A DNA stretch of 64,000 bases from Salisapilia sapeloensis CBS 127946 (lineage: Eukaryota > Protista > Oomycota): positions 62,001 through 126,000 of the forward strand of contig JAADVB010000016.1 of assembly GCA_023334545.1 (NCBI GenBank). The letters run 5' to 3'. Position numbers and translations under genes: made by a program. Below the pieces are notes generated by a model. The model had not been told where the DNA came from. It did not search any database and saw nothing but the letters and a program-made list of their open reading frames with translations. Shown here piece by piece: positions 37,070-48,912 of this stretch (positions within the stretch are counted from its first letter, which is position 1; each line of letters begins with the position of its first letter).

Positions 37070-38296
37070 TTACTCTCCGAATCTTTGCGTCACGTCATTT
37101 AGTAGCTGGAGCATACTGTCATTCTCTTCTCGACTACCGATCGTCGCTCGAAGACAGTCCGTTAGAAGTAACTGATTGCCTCGATAACGAATCACGACAC
37201 CTTTGTCTGCCATTTCACGATACACTTCTTCTGCATGCGGCACTTGGAAAAGAACGAAGTTCGAGTCCGACGCGTAGATGCACTTGACAAGCGATAGTTT
37301 GCGTAGTTCTTGCACAACTCTCTCCTTTTCCGATTTGATTAGAGCGATCTTGGACTCTACTTGCGCGACATTCGCCATGGCTTCCAATCCCACTTTGGAA
37401 GTCAATTTGCTGATGTTATAAGGAGCTTTGACGTTGTTGAGGATCTGGATCAAACGAGGGTGGCCAATGGCGCTGCCGAGACGGACACCAGCGAGACCGA
37501 ACGCCTTAGAGAGTGTCTGTAAGACCACGAGGCGAGGGTACTGCTGGACGAGACCAATCAAACTCGGTTCGTCGCTAAAGTCGACGTACGCTTCGTCCAC
37601 GACTACTAGACCCTTATAAGCAGAGCTCTCGAGGATTGTGCGGACGTCCGAGGCTCGAAGCATGTTGGCGGTCGGGTTACCAGGACTGCATAGGAACATG
37701 ATCTTCGTCGTGTCTTTGACTTGAGATAGGATCTCTTGTGGATCAATGTGGAAGGACGGAAGTTCGCCTTTGTCGTTGAGTCCCTTAGGATTGCTCTCGT
37801 CACGTTCGATGTGGAGAGGGCAGGAGATGATGTCGACGTCGTGGATGTTGGCACAAACCTTGTACATGCCGTAGGTTGGTGGTGTGATCAAAATCGAGTC
37901 TTTCGAAGGTGTGCAAGCAACGCGAACGACTAGATCGATTGCTTCGTCACTGCCAACACCGAGGAAGATGTTGTCTGGGCGGACGTGGCCGTGCTCGGAC
38001 GTCTCATTACGATAGTCGGCAATCGCTTTTTTCAGCTCCACCTGATATGGAGACGGGTATCTCTCCAACTGCATCTGCTGCAAGTCCTCAGCAGCAAGGG
38101 ATGAGCCCAAACTGTTCTCATTCGCATCAAGCAAAATGCCTATGCATAAAAGATAAGCCTCTTCTGACAAGCTTCAGCTTTAAATGCACAGAATTGAAAT
38201 ACCTTGGTCATAGTCATCACGTGCACACCGGTAGGGTGACAGAGCCAATATGTTTGGTCTTATAATTGCGTCAATCTCCTTTGCTCCTGCGTCCAT
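37070..38296 (-). CDS. HIS5: Histidinol-phosphate aminotransferase, 2 exons
   Basis: Exon 1 MDAGAKEIDAIIRPNILALSPYRCARDDYDQG is joined across intron 38140-38202 to ILLDANEN. Also GVGSDEAID, CSPGNPT, DEAY, TLSKAFGLAGVRLG and PYN. Confidence 0.95.
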
Positions 38297-39299
38297 GATG
38301 TCAGATTCAGTTGTGGATGGAAGCAGAGTTTCAACGGCCGATTATGTAATCACCATAGTCTGATTCTTGTGGCGAGTATCTTTCTCGGGGAGATACACGT
38401 CATGCTAACCACCTCCGTACGATTGCAAGTAAATGCATGAACGACAAAAAACTAGGTTAGTGCAATTGAGCGATAGTGCTTGTATACATTCCCAAGCAAC
38501 TTTATTGCTTAAGTATAGCTTGTCATTCTGGAAAGATAGAGACTTTTTAGAGTATTTTTTAAAATTAAAAGAGCATTTGTGTCATTTTGAAATAAATAGG
38601 AAATGACAACAAACCAAACAACGAATTTTGTCTACAACAAAAAGACAGCATATACTAACTTTTACATTTAAATTTGTGCTCCAGGTGCCAGCATCGCTTC
38701 TGGTCGATTAGCAAGACTCCTTAAGCTTCTGCAATATCGTCCTAGCCATGATCTTTTAATTCATGCACAGCCTCTGAGTGGCTCTCGGCAACGGCAGCAT
38801 CAAGCATGAAAGTGTTATTACAGCAGATGCTTCACGACTACAGTACGACCGAAGATTCGGGCATTTAGCAAACCTCAGATGGTTTAGTCCATTTATTAAG
38901 GCCTACCGAGAGCGTCCGTATAGGTTCACAGGTAACCTTAGATATGTAGTACTGTACAAAAACTATGCCAAATGTCCTTCCTAATTTTCAAGCTTAATTT
39001 GTTCTCATTTCTTTTAGTATCAGTGTATATTTACCTTAATAAAGCTGGGATCGTACATGATCGTCGGTCATGATTTTACAATAATACTGCGTGGAGAAGG
39101 CTATGTACAATCCAGCGTATCTTTATATTGCGCGCATTCGATTGGTGTCGTTTTCGTCAGGCGATGGGCATAACATTTGCATTTGATAGTCGAATCGTAG
39201 AGATCGGACATGAAATTATCCATTCATGTTGTAGGGGGTTCATAGACGTTGTGTCGAAATTTGGTCATTCCAACCTATCCGATTGATTGACTCTTTGAG

Positions 39300-41675
39300 A
39301 TCAATGAGGTGTTGTGGGTTATATCCGCCCACGAATTACTACGGCATATGCCCGATTAAGTTCTGAACGTAAGATTACCGTGGTAATCAAAGAACTTGAT
39401 TGTAGCATAAATTTTACTCGACTACCCACATATCGCACCACTTAGAGCAGATAAATCCCTTTGATGTTACGCTCTATCTTGAAAGTTATTTCCGCTCGCA
39501 GCTAATTACTCGGTTTAAAAGTTTCTTGTTAGCAGCTATCCGGTTCTGCCAGCCACAATGAAGTTCACCAGTCGCGAAATCACATATTTCTTTCTGATAC
39601 TTTAGGCATTGATTGATAAATATACGAAGGCTATCAATTCCTATAAGCTGATGCCACTAGTGTACGTGAATCGATCATCTTTGAGCAAAACACAAATGTA
39701 ATCATTTACGTTTTGTAGTGACCTGACCGGAGTTTACGTGAAAAAGCTCGATGGAGCTATCTTTCCAATCGGCCGAAAGATGTCAAACAATTTGTATCAT
39801 TTACTTAATATTCAATCTTGACCTCATGTGTGGATGCAGTTGGTTGCATGATAATCCGACCAAAGAAATAATGGGAATACTTCCAAGGCTAGAACTACTG
39901 TACTCTTGATATCACAATGTGTATGAACAAGTAACGAACCTGCTAAAACTTGTTATATGCAGCGCAATGAACGAAACCTTTGTCAAGAGTCTGGATTCAG
40001 GCAACTTTCCCAAACTTCGCAGTTTACATATATTCATGCTGAAACTGTGTATTAGCTACTTTTGCATCCATATCTTAACGCACTTCAAATACAATTGTCC
40101 ATGGCGGCAGTCTGGAGAAGATCACAAGTGTATGGAACCATCTCGACTATATGTGAGTCCTTGATTGTACACCTTTATGATATGTATTTGATCGTCTACA
40201 TTTGTAGGGAGTTGTATTACAGCCGGGTTTCCGAGATCACGGCGGAGGTGCCCATTCTCACCGAGGCGTAAGCTTTAAATAGTTCATTCTATCTTTCGAA
40301 CCACTGACGCGTCATGTATGAATGCAGCTGGGTGTATGGTAACCCGATCGAAGTTATATCGGGGACATTTCCAAAGCTGCAAAGGCTGTACGTGAAATAC
40401 ACTGGATACTACTATTAAAAAATCTGACTCGAGTTTAAAATGAGCAGGTGTATGGTCAACCCACTGCTTAAGAGTTTGGATGCAGTCGAGTTTCCCAAAG
40501 TTCGCGAATTGTACGTGTTCATATCAACCCTGTAGACTTGAAGATTAGGCACCGATATTGTAACCTATAAAAACTAGACAAATCATGGCGGCATATTGGA
40601 GGAATTAACTGGTGAATGGAAGCACCTCATCTACTTGTAAGTATTTGAATATGATCAATTCAAGGTGCTCATTTTATCATTTGTGTTATGTAGACAATTG
40701 AACAACAACAGCGTATCGGATATCAAAGCGAAGATGCTCAATCTCACTACAGCGTAAGCTATTGAAAATTGGAATTCTTGCCTCTATCACTGATGCTTTA
40801 TGTGTAAACTAGCTTCGTCAATTATAATGTCCTTACCGATTTTGACTGCGCCAAGTCGAAGGTGAATTACTTGTGAGGCACGTTCACGAAGATGCTTGGA
40901 CACTAAAGTCGCGCGATAACATTTGCAGGGCTACGGCGCACAATAAATTGACAAAAGAGAGTCTGCGTGGGTGGAAGTGTAAAGACGTCCATACCATGTA
41001 TGTTTTCCGTATCGCTACTTTTAAGCGTGCAAATGGATGGTGAGAACAGCAATTTGAGTGAAAACAACATCGGATTCTTTGATGACCCACACACCAATGC
41101 TCTTGGTTCAGTGAGGAAATTGTACGTGAATTTATACGCATATATAATCTGTAATACTTAAATGCTTAATGTTGAACAGGAACATAACGGGCGGTGTGCT
41201 AGATCAGTGGGATGGCAAGTAGCCCAATCTGAAGGAAGCGTGCGTACTTCTACACTACCAACAAAGTTTTTTCTATAAGTGAATTTTAGTCCTTGTGCAG
41301 GTGCATGGGCTACAATAAGCTCCAGAGATCAACGCATACACTCCGGCGATAAAAACATTGTAAGCCACTATGCTTTATAAGACAGATTTATGCTCATAAA
41401 GAAAACTATAAATGAACAATATGGATACTATAGGGAACTCCACTATAACAATCTTAGTGCTACGGGATTCCTTGCACAACCTTCGGGAAAGAATGTATCA
41501 AATCCTACTTCTGTAGATGTAGCCAAGTACATGAGTCTTCATGCTGAGGATTTGTAAGTGATTCTAGATGTTTTCTCCATTGCGAAGTTATACTAAGTGT
41601 GGATTGATTTGTAGGAATTTAAATGGCGATCCTATAATGAAAAAACTAGGGAGTGAAGAGCTCCTTTCTAAGTAG
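39300..41675 (+). pseudogene. Micro-exon leucine-rich-repeat gene (one LRR per exon), disabled
   Basis: Fourteen consecutive 59-72 nt exons at 39719-41359, plus two more to 41675, separated by 52-67 nt introns. The exons are read in phase 2 and each encodes an LRR-like unit. Lesions: non-GT donor at 40026, AC instead of AG at 40091-40092, 59-nt exons at 40578-40636 and 41301-41359, and an in-frame TAG at 41220-41222. The 5-prime part is too decayed to model. Confidence 0.8.
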
Positions 41676-43050
41676 ATTCTTATAAGCGAATTGCCCCATG
41701 AGAATTAAACTCAAGTTTGCATTCGCTTGTAGGAGCTCTACAGATAACTATATGCCTGATGAAGCAGGAATCTAGAACTATCTTCTTCGCCAAGTCAAAT
41801 GGAATTTTTCTTTGAAGCAGAAAGACTTTAAAGAATCTAACCGCATCCAAGGCATTCCACAAAACATTGAAATCAGACGTCATTCATTTTTATGTTAGCT
41901 ACTACTTTCTTGGATGAGTACGCGTTCAACAGAAGTGAAACTATATTGCTATTATTTGATGGCACATTTCAGTTTCAATCGCTATATGCACCATACCTAC
42001 AAATATAACTTGTAGTAGTGACGTTTGCATCCGCCCAAGTTAATTGCTTAAGCAGAGCTTTAATGATAGGTTGTACGGTGGAAGTTAAAGCAGACGACAA
42101 TATCATCACAAAACTCTTTTAGACTCGAGCATTTTTGAGGACGTAAGTAAACAAATTAAGCAGCATAGATGAACGGATAAAGCTATAACTTGTCAACGTA
42201 TACATATTAAGCACAGATAGGCTCTCTACGTTTTCTCTACGGACTGTCAATTCTTTTGTATCTAATTCTAGCTACAATAGTAATGCAAAAGATTTTTATA
42301 GCTGCATACTAGTCTGAAGATAGAAATCAGTTTGTGGTATTTGACGTTATGACTACTCTTACAATCTGCATAGCGATCATTATTGCCCAACTTGCGGAAG
42401 TGGTGTACCATACAAGCACAAAAGTAGACTGTAAAGCTCAAACTCTTGTGCTGGACTTCTTGAAAGTATTATGAAGGGTTAACATCCTACACAGTCGATA
42501 GACCACTTGTTAAATGCAATCTGGTAGCTTTGGCAATCTTTCTCATGAAATACTGTCATGCTATTAAATCCACTTGACAACAGTTTTGATAGTGACCACG
42601 TAGAAACTTGATTCATATTGTCAGCGCGTGGTTGCAAAGCTTTAAAGATGAAATAAGAAGTATAACCTACTATTTTAACGTACAATTACGCTTCTTTCTT
42701 GTCATAAATAATATCTATTGCAGTATCTCCGTTATTTTTTATGCTATCAAACAAATTAACATCCAGTTAGTAAATTTGGTAAGCTAGTATGCGATTAGTG
42801 CGTGCTAGGAGGGACGTTAGACATCGTAGGCTAAGCGACGCCAATGTACCTCACTATCGAATCAAATCGTCCGCCTAAAAAGGAAAGCTTATGCAATTCA
42901 TTACTGTCATTTGTTCACAAGCTACATCTTTGCATCATAGGTACCACATTAGTTTGTTGAAGATAGGTTTCCGATGGACGAGACCCCGAAGGATTGCCGA
43001 GGCGTGTCAAGATCGAGTGTCATTATACTTTGGAGAATACGTCTTAACGC

Positions 43051-45447
43051 TTAGTGGATGCTCGTCGCTTTTGGTCTCTTGGATAGATCCATCTCGGGAC
43101 ACGCAAGTCCGAGGGTACGGATGGATATCGGGCAAGAACTTAAAAAGGATGGCTTGACGGTAATGTTCACAATATCCGATGTTAACGACAGCATCTTGGA
43201 CTGTTTTCCGTCAGCGACGACGGTATCTGAGTATGGAAGTATGTGCGTATCCAACTCGATTAGAATAGTTCCAAAGGAAAAATTGTCACTGCTTTCATCA
43301 TAGCCAGTCTCTTCGCGTAAGATTTCAGGCGCCAGCCATCGGATGGTGTGTATACCTTTGGCCGTTAGAGTATTGTCCGCATCGAGCGTCCTAGCATTTT
43401 CAAAGTCTCCATTCTTGGCGATCAGTTCTTCAGACAGCAACACGTTCCGTGGCTTGAGATCTCGGTGAATGTAAGCTGGCGAAAATTAGTGCATGTAGAT
43501 GAGTGCATCTATAACATCAATCACATTTTGTAGCTTCTCGTTATTCCAATGGTGATCGACTCTTGATTCCGTCAGATAAGATCTGAGGTCTCCTCTCTCC
43601 ATGTACTCGTATAAAGCTTGAAAGTCCGCTTTTTTGATATAAGCTGTTCCGATAAACTTCAGAATGTGTGGATGACTAAGCTTCGCCGCAGTTTCGTTTT
43701 TTTAATAAAATTATGGTTGTCCTCGCTGTCTGTTTTGCTTTCGATCAACCGTTTGGATGCGAACTGCTCTCCAAAGTATTCTACGAGCCAGACTTCACCA
43801 AAGGCACCAGCGCCCAGTTGTCGTATTGGATGGATTTTGTTCGGCAACAGCTCATTCTTTCGCAAGACGCTATCATTCCAGATAGAGCTCATTACATCTT
43901 CAAGTGGGTGATAACTTGTGTTTGATGTACTTCCTCCTTCTGCTGTTGGCGGGCGGGAATCGCTTCCCGGAAATGTTGATTTTTTTAATTGTTAAAGTTT
44001 TGGTTAAAAAAGTGTGTAGAAATTGCTAGTATGATGCAATGGGGATAATCAGACGTAGAGGATCAAGGGAAGTGCCGTCTGTGCTGACACTGGACCCTAA
44101 TGATGTGTAAGTCTCTACAACGCAGACGAGCAATTCTGCATGACCCACAGTTTTCCATTCATCGCTCGGGCAGTAAGGGCTTTTCTTTCCGGTAACATTG
44201 GCACTCTTAAGTGCCATATCAAGCATGTTACATAGCTTAGATGATGCGAATCTTGTATTGGGTGGATCGCCATCAAGATATCTAAAGGCATACAATATAA
44301 GTCATGTATAAGGTAGGATGGAGCTCATTCGCATGTAAATATGTAGCTTACAGTTTTTCTAGACGTTTAACATTGACCAATGCTGACAGTTGGACTCGAG
44401 CTTATTATACTCCAAGTTTCTAATAAACGACATTTATGTTGAAAAGTGATGGATAGAAAAGTATTGGGCTTGTAAATAACTTGCAACTCTTCGAGCCATT
44501 TGGCATTGGCGCCAAACCAGCTCAGATTTTTAAACGACAAATCTCTATAAATCGTGATGGACAATTGGATAATGAGTACCGAGATGCATGAAACCATGAT
44601 ACGTACAACTCATAGAGGTAGTTGAAGCGAATATCGTAGGGGAACTATTGGATTGAATTGTGATCCATAGAGCTATGTATTTAGCACATATGTGACTCGT
44701 TAACGACGATGTGGCTATGCAAGGAGAAATACATATCGAGTACATACAGTTGTTTCAATGTGGCAAACCTCGAGAGATTTGCTGGCACGCTTCTGATATC
44801 GCAATTTGACAGTTTGATCGATGTTGTGTATTCATGCAGATTTGACATCAAGTCATCCGCAGATATGATTAAATTTGGTATTGATATCCGACGAAGATGG
44901 ATAGTTTTGAACATTTCGTATGCGAAACGAACATTTTGGACTCTGTGGTCGCTAAACTTACCACGAAGTTCCCTATGATGAATTGGTAGCAAATGCACAC
45001 CATTGACCCGTAAATAAAGATTTGTTTATAGTACGTCTTAAAAGAGAAGCAAACACATACCAGTTAGAAATGTTGTAAGGGGTGTTCAGATCGATTTTGT
45101 CCAAGTGTTTCAAGTCTAATTGAAACTCTTCCTTTTTGTGCTCGTTAAAGTCATCATTAATTTCAAATACATTGTACGCTTCACTTCAACGCCAGTAACA
45201 GTTCTACTGAACGGATCTTTGCATTGGCATTGGCATCCAGACTTTTCATCACCTTCCTTGCAGGTTACACCGAAAATTTTACACGGATTACGAAGGCCAT
45301 CAACCTGGTAGATAACGCATACTACATCGCAATCGTCATCGCAATCCGACATGAGAACATTCGTGCACTTATTGCGTTCTTTGGAGCTAACCCAGTCGAA
45401 AGGCACATGAGCACGATAGGCAAAAGCGAAAGTCTCAGAATCACCAT
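43051..45447 (-). pseudogene. LRR receptor-like kinase (TKL) pseudogene
   Basis: Signal peptide MVILRLSLLPIVLMCLSTGLA, Cys-rich ectodomain, phase-2 LRR exons, a degenerate TM, and kinase motifs LGAGAFGEV, IHRDLKPRNVLL, DFE (for DFG) and WLAPE. Multiple frameshifts and stops (TAG 44645-44647, TAA 43486-43488). Confidence 0.88.
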
Positions 45448-46413
45448 TGCTATGGTATAGGTTTGAGCCTTGGCGTGAAAATCTTAAAATGATCCTCTCG
45501 TTTAAGATTTAACACGTACAATCTAGCTTTGCCCACTAGCTCAAATATATGGAGTCAGCCAAATACAGAACTTTGGGCTAGCAGGTACACATAACTACAG
45601 AATCATAGGAAGTGATACCTAAGAAAGAGAGTCTAAATTATACGTACGCCTGGCTTTATCTTATCCTTCTAAACTAGTTTCTGTAGCAAACCAATTTGAT
45701 AGATACCTCGAAGTCGGATGTGGCATTCTCATTCCCATCCAAGAAAAAACGGTACGAGCAATATTCTTATTCGACAAATAGGCCGGTCTTCGATTATCGC
45801 ATACTTTTTGGAGGTATGCAAATGTTTTGCGGATTCATCTCTATCCCGATAACTATCCAATACAGGAATAGACGATTGATGACTGCTCCTTGTGAAATAC
45901 TCGTTTTCTATTTAAAAGTTAGCTCATTCACGTCTGGCATCATATGATATCAAGATATGGAAGGTCGAAAATCTGGTGTCATCGAGCACATCAATCTTCA
46001 AATTGCTGCCAGTCATCATTCGATGCACTTTCCAACGTGACGAGCGGAAACTTGCGTCATATGTAAAAGCCGTACAAATCTTTCCTTCTACCAGCTAAAC
46101 TAGGTTACCACAAAGCACATAAGCAGAAGTACATTTACTTTGTACACAATAGATAAAGGTTATAATTTTCCACACCTTAGATGCCAGCGATGGATGCTTG
46201 GGCTCATCCTACAGACTGTCAAATTCAAACCTTGATTTTGATATGTGTCTGACACATGTGGTGCAAGCATATATGCACGGGCCGTTGTGCTTCAATACTT
46301 CTATCTACCGTATTAACAGTTTCGACACCACAAATGATACAGTCAGAACAGACCCAGGTATTCACAGGACTTGGTGAGAAGGTAAAATCCAGTATAAGTC
46401 AGAAGTGGTCGTC

Positions 46414-46650
46414 TACTCCCCTGCTTTTATTAGGGGGTTCAAAGTAGTAGAATTTTGTCTTTTATTTCTTGCAGTCTGATGCAGATGCTTTGATCGTCAG
46501 ATTTTGATGTTTTTGGAGTCTGATATGTAAACATCGAATGCTAATTATTTAAGAGCGATATTTATGCAGGTTGATGATCTCGAACACAGATGACTGATAA
46601 ATTTTGTCCGATTCCAGTACTTAAAACCCCCTATTAAAGGTGATAAAGTA
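46414..46650. mobile_element. Degenerate MITE-like element with terminal inverted repeats, TA-flanked
   Basis: 46424-46453 matches the reverse complement of 46611-46640 at 24 of 30 nt. Symmetric outer TACT...AGTA ends carry TA at 46414-46415 and 46649-46650. No internal ORF. Confidence 0.45.
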
Positions 46651-47399
46651 GACAATCCATTTAAATACAAATTTCAAGTATATTGTCATTCATTTCGTTT
46701 GTCTGGGCTATCTATCCTTTCTTTGTCATCTTAAGCATTCTCACTTTCACTTTATTTTTGTGTACCTTAAGTTGAATGTTTACTTGTACTCGCCGTAGCT
46801 CCTCCGGCGTTCATCGTTCTTTATTAATGCATGACAAGAAGGCCAGCGAAAATTAGCTATGTTTTGTTTATAATATGGGTCACGATTAAAAATTATATGG
46901 ACGCAATAAGCTAATGTTTACTTTATGGTGTCCGGATCTATCACAATACATCGACTCTATTCAGGGCTTTCAAGGTAACCTGCGTTTTAGCCCGAAGGTT
47001 TATCGGAGAAGTATTGCGATTCATATATCTAATTCTTGGAATGGAAAAGATAGATTTAATAAAATTCATTGTAAGGTAAGAAGAAGATAGGTGGTCAGCA
47101 AAAAATCGTGGATTGAGCTCATGGGTAGAAGAGAATAGATAAAGATATTAAGTCTAGCCATGTATGGATCGATCACCCAACTACCCGCACTATCATCATA
47201 ACCCTTAGAGAAAATTGCAATGAGATTAAAGATACAGAATGCTAGTACCCTCAGAAAGCACCACAAATGAATGCGCCATGATGAAGGTACTTTAAGAAAG
47301 CCTACTGCTCATGAACGCAGACTCCTCTCATCTCATTATTATCAAGATGATAGCATCATTTCTCTCTCTGTCTCTCTCTTCCTTCGGTCAAGCAAATAT

Positions 47400-48912
47400 C
47401 TAATCATCCTGCCGAAGTCGCATCTCAGTCATCTTTAGCCACACTAGTTTCCGATTACTCTCCGTATCCTTCAGATTAAGATCCGAGATACTCCTCCTCC
47501 ATACATTTCCAATCGTGGTATCCAACTCATTCTCTTTTCCAATGGCTCTTGGCAAAAAGTCGCCACCTGATGCGCTTCCCCTGGACTCAAAGATCTCAGC
47601 AGCAGCAGTGGACGATGATAGCTCGGCAAGTGCGTTTAGTGAACTATCCGTCGATGGACTTTGGTGATCTGAGTCAAACTCGTACACTTCACCAAGGTAA
47701 CATTCTTTCTCAGGCCACACACTCGAGTCTTCCTCTAAACGGAGACTCTGGATGGATCAACAAGAGTGGATGCACTGCCGTCGTTTTCATACCTTCCAGC
47801 TAGAAATTCTTGTCGAGCCACTTTATATGAATTTAATTTGCCAGCGAATTTATCACAATTAATGCAGAGCCGAACCTTTTTAGTCTCAAGCTTTAACTTG
47901 GGAAACACTTTAAGTAGCTCAAGAGGAACTGTACAATTCCCACAGACTACCGAATCACATAAATTGCAGGAGTAGGTTTTCTGGACGGGACCAAAGCGTT
48001 TTTTGCACAACTGACACTTGGGCGTGCTTTCATCTTCGCTGTCCGAAACAGAGCTCATGTAACCACCACATCCCGCATTTTTCATCTGAAGAAGCCAAGA
48101 TAGTTTTCTCATTTTCGCACAGCGCGCTGATGTCCAAGTGTCTATAAGTACATTCGACAAGGTGACGATGCCAATGGAGTCGAGAATATCATTGCCAATT
48201 AATTCGTAATATCCTTTGATGAACACTTCAACCGACTGGTTTGTTACGGGCTTAAAGAGAGTACACGATGAAAGACGATATCGTATAATGCCTTGTCCAT
48301 AGAGTGGGGAAGTGTAGGGCAAGTCGACTGAATGCATAAGCGCATAACTAATCCGCTCGTGTTAACTAATTTAGAGGATTCCAGTAGCGCGAATGCAAAC
48401 ACCATCTTTGTCTTTTGAGACGCCTCGAAGTGCTGAGCTTGGACTACCGGTCTGCCATAGGAGACAAGTGGAGCGATATGGATACTCCAGAGTTGGCTTT
48501 TCGACCGTCACAAGAATTTGGCAATTCCTCATTGGTGATCCCGCGTAGCTCATACCTTGCACAAAGCCTTCTTCGTCGCCGTAGACGACACCATATAGGA
48601 TGTCATCTACATTTTGTGGGATCATTCTATTACCAACGACAGCACGAGGCATTGCCAGCCAGCACTTTCAGTAGATTTATCTTTCACTACGTGCCTTAAC
48701 GGGTTCCGCTCTCGGTACATGGTCACATTGTCTGATGCCTTTATAGGTTTCCATGGTTTGCTGTCTATTCTCCGAGGTACCGACTTGTCGAACTTTTGGT
48801 AATGTCGGAGTGCTTCGTGGACGAGTATCATTGCAATACGCTTGCAATCAGTCTTCTTTGCTTCCGAGAGCGAAAAGCCTTCGTATTCATCTGCTGTCCA
48901 CTGGGCCGTCAT
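47400..48912 (-). pseudogene. Oomycete START-like plus FYVE-like domain gene, disabled
   Basis: WKPIKASDNVTMYRER, VDDILYG, HSVDLP and CQLC...CNLCDSVVCGNC...LCINC are typical of this family. It is broken by a frameshift near 48655, two in-frame TAA codons (48371-48373 and 48362-48364) and another frame change near 47735. Confidence 0.8.

What the first reader, a model, noticed from the sequence alone, without database searches (positions are those of the whole stretch)
39719..41675. LRR gene built as one repeat per 60-72 nt phase-2 micro-exon (exon-cassette receptor architecture)
Seen: exons at 39719-39781, 39840-39899, 39963-40025, 40093-40152, 40208-40267, 40328-40387, 40448-40510, 40578-40636, 40694-40753, 40813-40872, 40929-40997, 41050-41121, 41180-41239 and 41301-41359 each start with 1 nt, end with 2 nt and encode one 20-24 aa LRR-like unit (e.g. 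WVYGNPIEVISGTFPKLQRL, QLNNNSVSDIKAKMLNLTTA, NLSENNIGFFDDPHTNALGSVRKL). Introns interrupt the same codon position of each repeat. No exon is long enough to appear in the ORF track. Known: repeat-per-exon LRR genes with exon shuffling are described for brown algal (Ectocarpus) ROCO-type candidate immune receptors and some plant LRR-RLKs, whereas oomycete genes are usually intron-poor. Inference: symmetric exons can be skipped, duplicated or swapped without frameshift, so this may be a relic of a diversifying LRR receptor family in an oomycete.
Basis: partly seen in the sequence, partly recalled or inferred. Interest (0 to 1): 0.8.

Follow-up and report, generated by a model that had tools for sequence, protein, structure and literature searches.

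The report
Dead one-repeat-per-exon LRR receptor fragment
This is a real row of 16 tiny exons, 14 of them coding one leucine-rich repeat each, but it is a broken and apparently silent leftover of an oomycete receptor-kinase gene, and the exon layout is the normal one for that gene family.

Summary
Window 39719-41675 (+) carries 16 consecutive exons. Fourteen are 59-72 nt and code one 20-24 aa LRR each. The 15 introns are 52-74 nt, 14 of them GT..AG, and they lie after the second base of a codon, apart from two 59-nt exons that have each lost a base.

The layout is not unusual for oomycetes. I mapped annotated LRR receptor-kinase genes of Thraustotheca clavata, Saprolegnia diclina, Pythium oligandrum and Phytophthora kernoviae. 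All have the same build: 60-72 nt exons (some double), all phase 2, each starting xLxxNxL. Four consecutive intron positions here coincide exactly with those of a P. oligandrum receptor kinase.

This copy is dead. One intron has lost both splice sites, two exons have lost one base each, and there is an in-frame TAG. No signal-peptide exon was recognised, and there is no membrane or kinase part. No contig from four RNA runs covers it, although they do show the weakly expressed neighbour.

Ectocarpus ROCO-type LRR exons use a different phase and boundary, so the resemblance is analogy, not homology. An old in-frame four-exon duplication is the only sign of cassette behaviour.

The scan has already noted this architecture several times elsewhere in this genome. 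It is ordinary: a new pseudogene member of a known family.

The parts
39719..39781 (+). LRR exon 1 (63 nt, phase 2 both ends)
   Evidence: AG before and GT after, open frame
39840..40267 (+). Four-exon block A: exons 39840-39899, 39963-40025, 40093-40152, 40208-40267. The intron 40026-40092 between the 2nd and 3rd has lost both splice sites (AC..AC).
40328..40753 (+). Four-exon block B, an old tandem copy of block A: exons 40328-40387, 40448-40510, 40578-40636 (59 nt, one base missing near its 5' end), 40694-40753
   Evidence: 484-nt offset repeat. Exons are 65.6% and introns 57.6% nt identical, protein 43%.
40813..41121 (+). LRR exons 10-12: 40813-40872, 40929-40997, 41050-41121 (60, 69, 72 nt), intact and phase 2
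   Evidence: The junction after exon 11 coincides with a P0073 intron.
41180..41239 (+). LRR exon 13 with an in-frame TAG at 41220-41222
41301..41359 (+). LRR exon 14, 59 nt: one base lost in the middle (about 41325-41330). It starts in one frame and ends in another.
41434..41553 (+). Exon 15 (120 nt, phase 2): last regular LRR plus a longer variable part
41615..41675 (+). Exon 16: start of the LRR C-terminal cap (NLNGDP...EELLSK), then TAG at 41673-75. In relatives this same exon runs on into the membrane helix and the kinase.
   Evidence: No kinase remnant on the + strand of 41676-43050.
39606..39661 (+). Possible further degenerate unit upstream (AG..GTACGT flanks, 56 nt); not supported statistically
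   Evidence: read from the sequence. The alignment test gives z = 1.3.

Best explanation
Window 39719-41675 (+) is a decayed fragment of the ectodomain part of an oomycete LRR receptor-kinase gene, and no transcript of it was detected.

In this family each leucine-rich repeat sits on its own 60-72 nt exon. The exon starts at xLxxNxL and ends at the last L of the repeat. Every intron interrupts the same codon position (phase 2), so exon-plus-intron units can be duplicated by unequal recombination without breaking the frame. That process built the array, and the old four-exon tandem duplication is a trace of it.

This copy then lost its function. No 5' signal-peptide or Cys-rich exon was recognised. 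Its 3' part (membrane helix and kinase) is gone, with a stop inside the LRR C-cap. One intron has lost both splice sites, two exons have one-base deletions, and one exon carries a nonsense codon.

It lies tail to tail with a second, weakly transcribed and also damaged LRR-kinase gene, inside a 9.5-kb AT-rich island without intact genes. This fits birth-and-death turnover of a clustered receptor family.

Shown here: the exon structure, the defects, the shared architecture and intron positions with receptor kinases, and the absence of RNA contigs. Inferred: the receptor-kinase origin (rather than an LRR-only gene), and duplication by unequal crossing-over.
For: Structure and composition:
- Exon and intron anatomy, and exon versus intron GC.

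Family of the neighbour:
- The kinase piece of the neighbouring gene finds relatives. All ten checked have a kinase domain, and eight also have Pfam LRR hits.

Shared architecture, mapped by exact protein-to-locus splicing:
- T. clavata P0001/L001: 25 LRR exons of 60-147 nt, all phase 2.
- P. oligandrum P0073/L002 and P0077/L003.
- S. diclina P0066/L004.
- P. kernoviae P0095/L005.
- All show the same exon starts. Species names for the assemblies come from PMC8308905.

Link of this gene to that family:
- phmmer of the conceptual product against P0073 gives E about 2e-6, over the region where Pfam finds LRR_4 and LRR_8.
- Four successive intron positions (product residues 226, 250, 270, 290) coincide exactly with P0073 junctions 203, 225, 245 and 268, in the same phase.
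- Exon 16 aligns to the start of the relatives' terminal exon.

Loss of function:
- No kinase or N-terminal remnant beside the array.
- Zero depth over 39450-42900 in four RNA runs of the same organism. The same runs hold the ALDH gene fully and show the neighbouring gene at word depth 1-6 with a spliced GT..AG joint.
Against: - The RNA evidence is from assembled contigs of four runs from one study. It shows presence, not absence.
- The only DNA run holding the stretch is probably the source of the assembly, so the one-base deletions are not independently confirmed.
- No close relative or parent copy was found. The best match is only about 20 bits, so the receptor-kinase origin rests on intron positions and the C-cap alignment.
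- Earlier scan notes report expressed LRR-only secreted genes with the same layout in this genome. This copy could descend from one of those.
Confidence: 0.8

Rival explanations
1. It is a decayed copy of an LRR-only secreted gene rather than a truncated receptor kinase. This genome seems to hold many such genes with the same exon layout. On this reading the stop at 41673 is close to the natural end of the protein.
For: Earlier scan notes, not checked here, describe several expressed secreted LRR genes with one repeat per phase-2 exon in the same genome. No trace of a kinase lies downstream.
Against: The last four intron positions and the final exon match a receptor kinase of P. oligandrum residue for residue. 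The stop falls where that relative's C-cap continues. The locus sits next to another LRR-kinase gene, and receptor-kinase genes are clustered in relatives too.
Confidence: 0.25
2. It is a live gene. The apparent defects would be assembly errors, or would be bypassed by alternative splice sites or exon skipping, and the gene would be expressed only in stages that were not sampled.
For: Twelve of 14 single-repeat exons are intact and 14 of 15 introns keep GT..AG. Exons are symmetric, so skipping exon 13 alone would remove the TAG without a frameshift.
Against: There are five independent defects, including a substitution-type stop and a doubly mutated intron. I found no in-frame alternative sites for that intron (read). 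No start or signal-peptide exon was found. No RNA contig appears in four runs that do detect a neighbour at very low depth. The array lies in a 40% GC island among 50% GC genes.
Confidence: 0.06
3. It is part of an active exon-cassette diversification system, in which exons are swapped or skipped to generate receptor variants, as proposed for Ectocarpus ROCO genes.
For: The exons are symmetric phase-2 units and a four-exon block was duplicated in frame. The family is clustered and shows birth and death.
Against: The duplication is old (43% aa identity). There is no expression and no near-identical exons within the window. The intron position and phase differ from the one Ectocarpus LRR gene mapped here. 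In relatives the exon order is conserved enough for intron positions to line up across orders.
Confidence: 0.04

Closest known systems
Oomycete LRR receptor kinases (LRR-RK / PsRLK family; PMC3268121, PMC8254037, PMC10390575)
   Same: The repeat type is the same: 20-24 aa, xLxxNxLxxIxxxxFPxLxxL. Each repeat sits on one phase-2 exon, and four intron positions are identical to those of P. oligandrum P0073. The C-cap motif matches. The gene lies next to another family member.
   Different: No signal-peptide or Cys-rich first exon was recognised, and there is no membrane helix, no kinase and no open frame. It has 14-16 single-repeat exons, against 3-12 in the relatives mapped here. None of the three papers mentions introns or exons in its main text.
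Ectocarpus ROCO-type LRR genes with 72-nt LRR exons (PMC3341825, PMC11378527)
   Same: One repeat per short symmetric exon, which allows frame-neutral exon duplication. The family contains pseudogenes.
   Different: In the one Ectocarpus LRR gene mapped here the introns are phase 1, the exons start at PIPxxL and are exactly 72 nt, and the introns are 178-729 nt. That gene family has a ROC-COR signalling part, not a kinase. The intron position differs, so the origin is independent.
[quoted passage not shown]
   Same: Tandem arrays of equal-sized LRR exons, almost all split by phase-2 introns, explained by clonal exon duplication.
   Different: Those exons are exactly 90 bp, against 60-72 nt here. 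That family has thousands of young copies. It is a ciliate lineage, and no homology has been shown.
Plant LRR-RLKs of the SERK type, one 72-nt exon per LRR (from my own knowledge, not tested here)
   Same: As I recall, each LRR is on its own exon, with the boundary before xLxxNxL.
   Different: Kinase trees place the oomycete and plant families apart (PMC3268121). The two plant LRR genes I fetched were intronless or nearly so, so the comparison could not be made here.

Membership tests
Oomycete LRR receptor kinase (LRR-TM-kinase) | Extracellular array of 20-24 aa LRRs related to those of family members | tested here: met
   phmmer against P0073 gives E about 2e-6 over 126 residues, within its Pfam LRR_4/LRR_8 region. 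The unit HMM hits family members, and reversed controls do not.
Oomycete LRR receptor kinase (LRR-TM-kinase) | Gene structure: one LRR per 60-72 nt exon, phase-2 introns before xLxxNxL | tested here: met
   Window. Relatives in four species. Four intron positions coincide exactly.
Oomycete LRR receptor kinase (LRR-TM-kinase) | Transmembrane helix and protein kinase domain after the LRRs | tested here: not met
   A stop at 41673 lies inside the C-cap. No kinase-like hit on the + strand of 41676-43050, even at E 10.
Oomycete LRR receptor kinase (LRR-TM-kinase) | First exon with signal peptide and Cys-rich N-terminal cap | tested here: not met
   No such ORF or similarity in 38200-39718. N-caps are poorly conserved, so a badly decayed one could be missed.
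Oomycete LRR receptor kinase (LRR-TM-kinase) | Intact, expressed reading frame | tested here: not met
   Five defects. Zero RNA contig cover in four runs.
Pfam LRR families (LRR_1, LRR_4, LRR_8) | Score above threshold against the family HMMs | tested here: inconclusive
   Single exon peptides of 20-40 aa give no hit. The spliced product could not be handed to the tool by reference.
Ectocarpus ROCO LRR-exon genes | 72-nt type I LRR exon (GxxPxxL...LxLxxNxLx) and a ROC-COR domain | tested here: not met
   The exon boundary and phase differ from the one Ectocarpus LRR gene mapped here (phase 2 here, phase 1 in P0209/L007). No ROC-COR is present in the window region.
Tetrahymena 90-bp exon LRR arrays | Exons of exactly 90 bp separated by phase-2 introns | tested here: not met
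   Phase 2 is met, but exon length is 59-72 nt. The family definition is from PMC6564038.

The most novel reading that the evidence does not exclude
The one-LRR-per-phase-2-exon build may be ancestral to oomycete LRR receptor-kinase ectodomains, since it is shared by Saprolegniales and Peronosporales with intron positions that still line up. I found no paper that describes it. If exon units are also exchanged between clustered paralogues, oomycetes would have a receptor-diversifying mechanism parallel to the brown-algal one, and this locus would be one of its discarded products.
Probability: 0.15. Interest if true: 0.5.

Novelty: new member of a known kind. Interest (0 to 1): 0.22.

Why it matters
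By itself the locus matters little. It is a dead copy in a gene-poor island.

The useful by-product is a rule for annotation. Oomycete LRR receptor genes are invisible to ORF-based scans because their ectodomains are strings of 60-72 nt phase-2 exons. Gene models around them are also often wrong. The T. clavata model P0001 fuses four tandem genes, and the P. ramorum model P0155 stops after three LRR exons.

The conserved intron positions give a simple handle for a family-wide test of whether these receptors diversify by exon duplication or exchange.

Tried and rejected
- **Tandem Repeats Finder** on 38000-43500 found nothing. The copies are too diverged.
- **Other copies in the window.** Single-unit protein HMMs and a DNA HMM found no further copies on either strand.
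- **Upstream extension.** Extending the array upstream (39545-39718) is not supported, z = 1.3.
- **U12-type AT-AC intron.** I considered this for 40026-40092 because of a TCTTAAC-like box. I rejected it: no boundary choice keeps the frame, and the paralogous intron 40511-40577 is an ordinary GT..AG intron with the same TAAC box.
- **tblastn of 150 kinase relatives** against single exons was too insensitive. It worked only with the spliced conceptual product.
- **Mixed-profile word search** (homologue LRR regions plus the window's exon peptides by reference) returned generic LRR proteins and no close relative.
- **Looking up a neighbouring ORF** to get the genome's own gene calls failed. That product is not on record.
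- **Pfam on single exons** gave nothing.
- **Two plant LRR genes**, fetched to compare intron positions, were intronless or nearly so.
- **The spliced product** could not be given to the Pfam, structure or large homology tools, because it has no reference and I did not type it in.

Full report
**1. What is in the sequence**

Twelve of the 13 introns between them start GT and end AG, and they are 52-67 nt long. Two more exons follow: 41434-41553 (120 nt) and 41615-41672, then TAG at 41673-75. The array therefore has 16 exons and 15 introns of 52-74 nt, 14 of them GT..AG. Exons have 44.7% GC and introns 34.8%.

Each single-repeat exon begins with the last base of a split codon and ends with the first two bases of the next. 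It codes one unit of the form xLxxNxLxxIxxxxFPxLxx(L). Exons 2-5 (39840-40267) and 6-9 (40328-40753) are an old tandem duplication at a 484-nt offset. Exons are 65.6% identical, introns 57.6%, and the proteins 43%.

**2. The copy is broken**

- Intron 40026-40092 starts AC and ends AC. Its paralogue 40511-40577 has GT..AG. I found no nearby in-frame alternative sites, and the intron is 67 nt, so retaining it shifts the frame.
- Exon 40578-40636 is 59 nt, one base short at its 5' end compared with its paralogue 40093-40152.
- Exon 41180-41239 has an in-frame TAG at 41220-22.
- Exon 41301-41359 is 59 nt. It starts in the expected frame and ends in another one, so a base was lost in its middle.
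- No signal-peptide or Cys-rich first exon is recognisable in 38200-39718. A possible extra unit at 39606-39661 is not supported.
- After the stop at 41673 there is no trace of a membrane segment or kinase on the + strand up to 43050, even at E 10.

**3. Expression**

Four RNA runs of the same organism hold the neighbouring aldehyde dehydrogenase gene almost completely. Their contigs give zero depth over 39450-42900. The same runs cover the minus-strand neighbour (42936-45440) at word depth 1-6. One contig there joins 44352 to 44281, skipping 70 nt that read GT..AG on the minus strand.

The runs are therefore sensitive enough to see a weakly expressed gene 1.3 kb away, and the silent stretch speaks against DNA carry-over. 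Contigs show presence rather than absence, so this is good but not final evidence of silence.

**4. What family it belongs to**

The minus-strand neighbour carries a protein kinase (43051-43892) with a frameshift near 43680 and an in-frame stop at 43486-88. An RNA contig covers that stop without any difference.

A stop-free 144-aa piece of that kinase was scored against 1.84 billion representatives. All ten relatives checked with Pfam have a kinase domain, and eight of them also have LRR hits ahead of it. That is the oomycete LRR-RK family of PMC3268121 and PMC8254037.

I fetched the loci of five such proteins and mapped each protein exactly onto its DNA. PMC8308905 names the assemblies as Thraustotheca clavata, Saprolegnia diclina, Pythium oligandrum and Phytophthora kernoviae.

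In every case the ectodomain is a string of 60-72 nt exons, or 123-138 nt where two repeats are fused. All are in phase 2, and each starts xLxxNxL. They are followed by one large terminal exon holding the last LRR, the C-cap, the membrane helix and the kinase. Intron lengths are 39-57 nt in T. clavata and 57-76 nt in P. oligandrum and P. kernoviae, against 52-74 nt here.

**5. Link between the window's array and that family**

The spliced conceptual product (X at each break) matches P. oligandrum P0073 over 126 residues with E about 2e-6. The match lies in the region where Pfam finds LRR_4 and LRR_8 in P0073.

In that alignment the window's junction residues 226, 250, 270 and 290 fall exactly on P0073's junction residues 203, 225, 245 and 268, in the same phase. 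Exon 16 (NLNGDP...EELLSK) lines up with the first part of the relatives' terminal exon (NLDG...EKLLKTY in P0073...LLSKL in T. clavata). The stop therefore falls inside the LRR C-cap, before the membrane helix.

I read this as a receptor-kinase ectodomain whose 3' part was lost. Earlier scan notes (not checked here) report expressed LRR-only secreted genes with the same layout in this genome, so I keep descent from such a gene as the main rival.

**6. Comparison with what is known**

- **Ectocarpus ROCO.** One LRR per 72-nt exon is described for Ectocarpus ROCO genes (PMC3341825). I mapped one Ectocarpus LRR gene, P0209/L007. Its exons are exactly 72 nt, in phase 1, start at PIPxxL, and are separated by introns of 178-729 nt. 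That is a different intron position, so the likeness to the oomycete genes is analogy.
- **Tetrahymena.** Its LRR genes have arrays of exactly 90-bp exons with more than 96% phase-2 introns (PMC6564038). The principle is the same, but exon size and lineage differ.
- **Literature on the oomycete family.** The three oomycete LRR-RK papers I read never mention introns or exons in their main text. A full-text search for oomycete + LRR + intron + 'per exon' found nothing. The architecture is visible in public gene models but may not have been written up. My search covers only the open-access library.
- **This scan.** It has already noted the architecture several times on other DNA of this genome.

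**7. Mechanism**

Symmetric phase-2 units allow exon-plus-intron duplication by unequal recombination without loss of frame. The four-exon duplication, whose introns have matching lengths and residual similarity, is direct evidence that this happened here.

Nothing indicates present-day shuffling or splice-based diversification. There are no near-identical exons and no expression, and intron positions have stayed aligned between this gene and a P. oligandrum receptor kinase.

The setting fits birth-and-death turnover of a clustered receptor family. The array lies in an AT-rich stretch (38.2-47.7 kb, about 40% GC against about 50% around it, with no ORF over 150 aa) that also holds a second damaged LRR-kinase gene. 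In the relatives these genes also sit in tandem.

**8. Verdict**

The thing itself is ordinary, a silent pseudogene fragment with the family's standard gene structure.

Noticed in passing
window 43051-45447 (-): This is a second LRR receptor-kinase gene, tail to tail with the array. It has a signal-peptide-like start at 45447, a Cys-rich N-terminal exon in another frame, a few LRR exons, and a large last exon with the kinase. The kinase has a frameshift near 43680 and an in-frame stop at 43486-88. An RNA contig covers that stop without any difference, so this looks like a weakly transcribed pseudogene. The intron 44282-44351 (70 nt, GT..AG on the minus strand, phase 2, just before YLDGDPPN) is confirmed by an RNA joint.
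   Followed up: partly
window 44488 (-): An RNA contig stops exactly at 44488, the predicted 3' end of the micro-exon 44488-44544. It then runs unspliced through 44487-44352. This may be a graph branch between spliced and intron-retaining forms.
   Followed up: no
window 38200-47700: This AT-rich stretch (about 40% GC against about 50% in the flanks) has no ORF over 150 aa. It holds both damaged LRR genes and lies between densely packed housekeeping genes (aminotransferase, PFK, ALDH, ion channel).
   Followed up: partly
L001:1001-12252 (Thraustotheca clavata, JNBS01001780.1): The annotated 2927-aa protein P0001 appears to be four tandem LRR receptor-kinase genes fused into one model. The three long 'introns' of 546, 530 and 188 nt sit where one kinase ends and the next N-terminal exon begins.
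   Followed up: partly
L006:3001-4087 (Phytophthora ramorum, JAZGLQ010000007.1): The 272-aa model P0155 ends after the third LRR exon of a gene that is a full receptor kinase in P. kernoviae (P0095). It is either a truncated model or a truncated gene.
   Followed up: no
L007:501-5716 (Ectocarpus sp., CAXNAK020001001.1): This LRR gene has six exons of exactly 72 nt, all phase 1 and each starting PIPxxL, with introns of 178-729 nt. The intron position differs from that of the oomycete LRR exons.
   Followed up: yes
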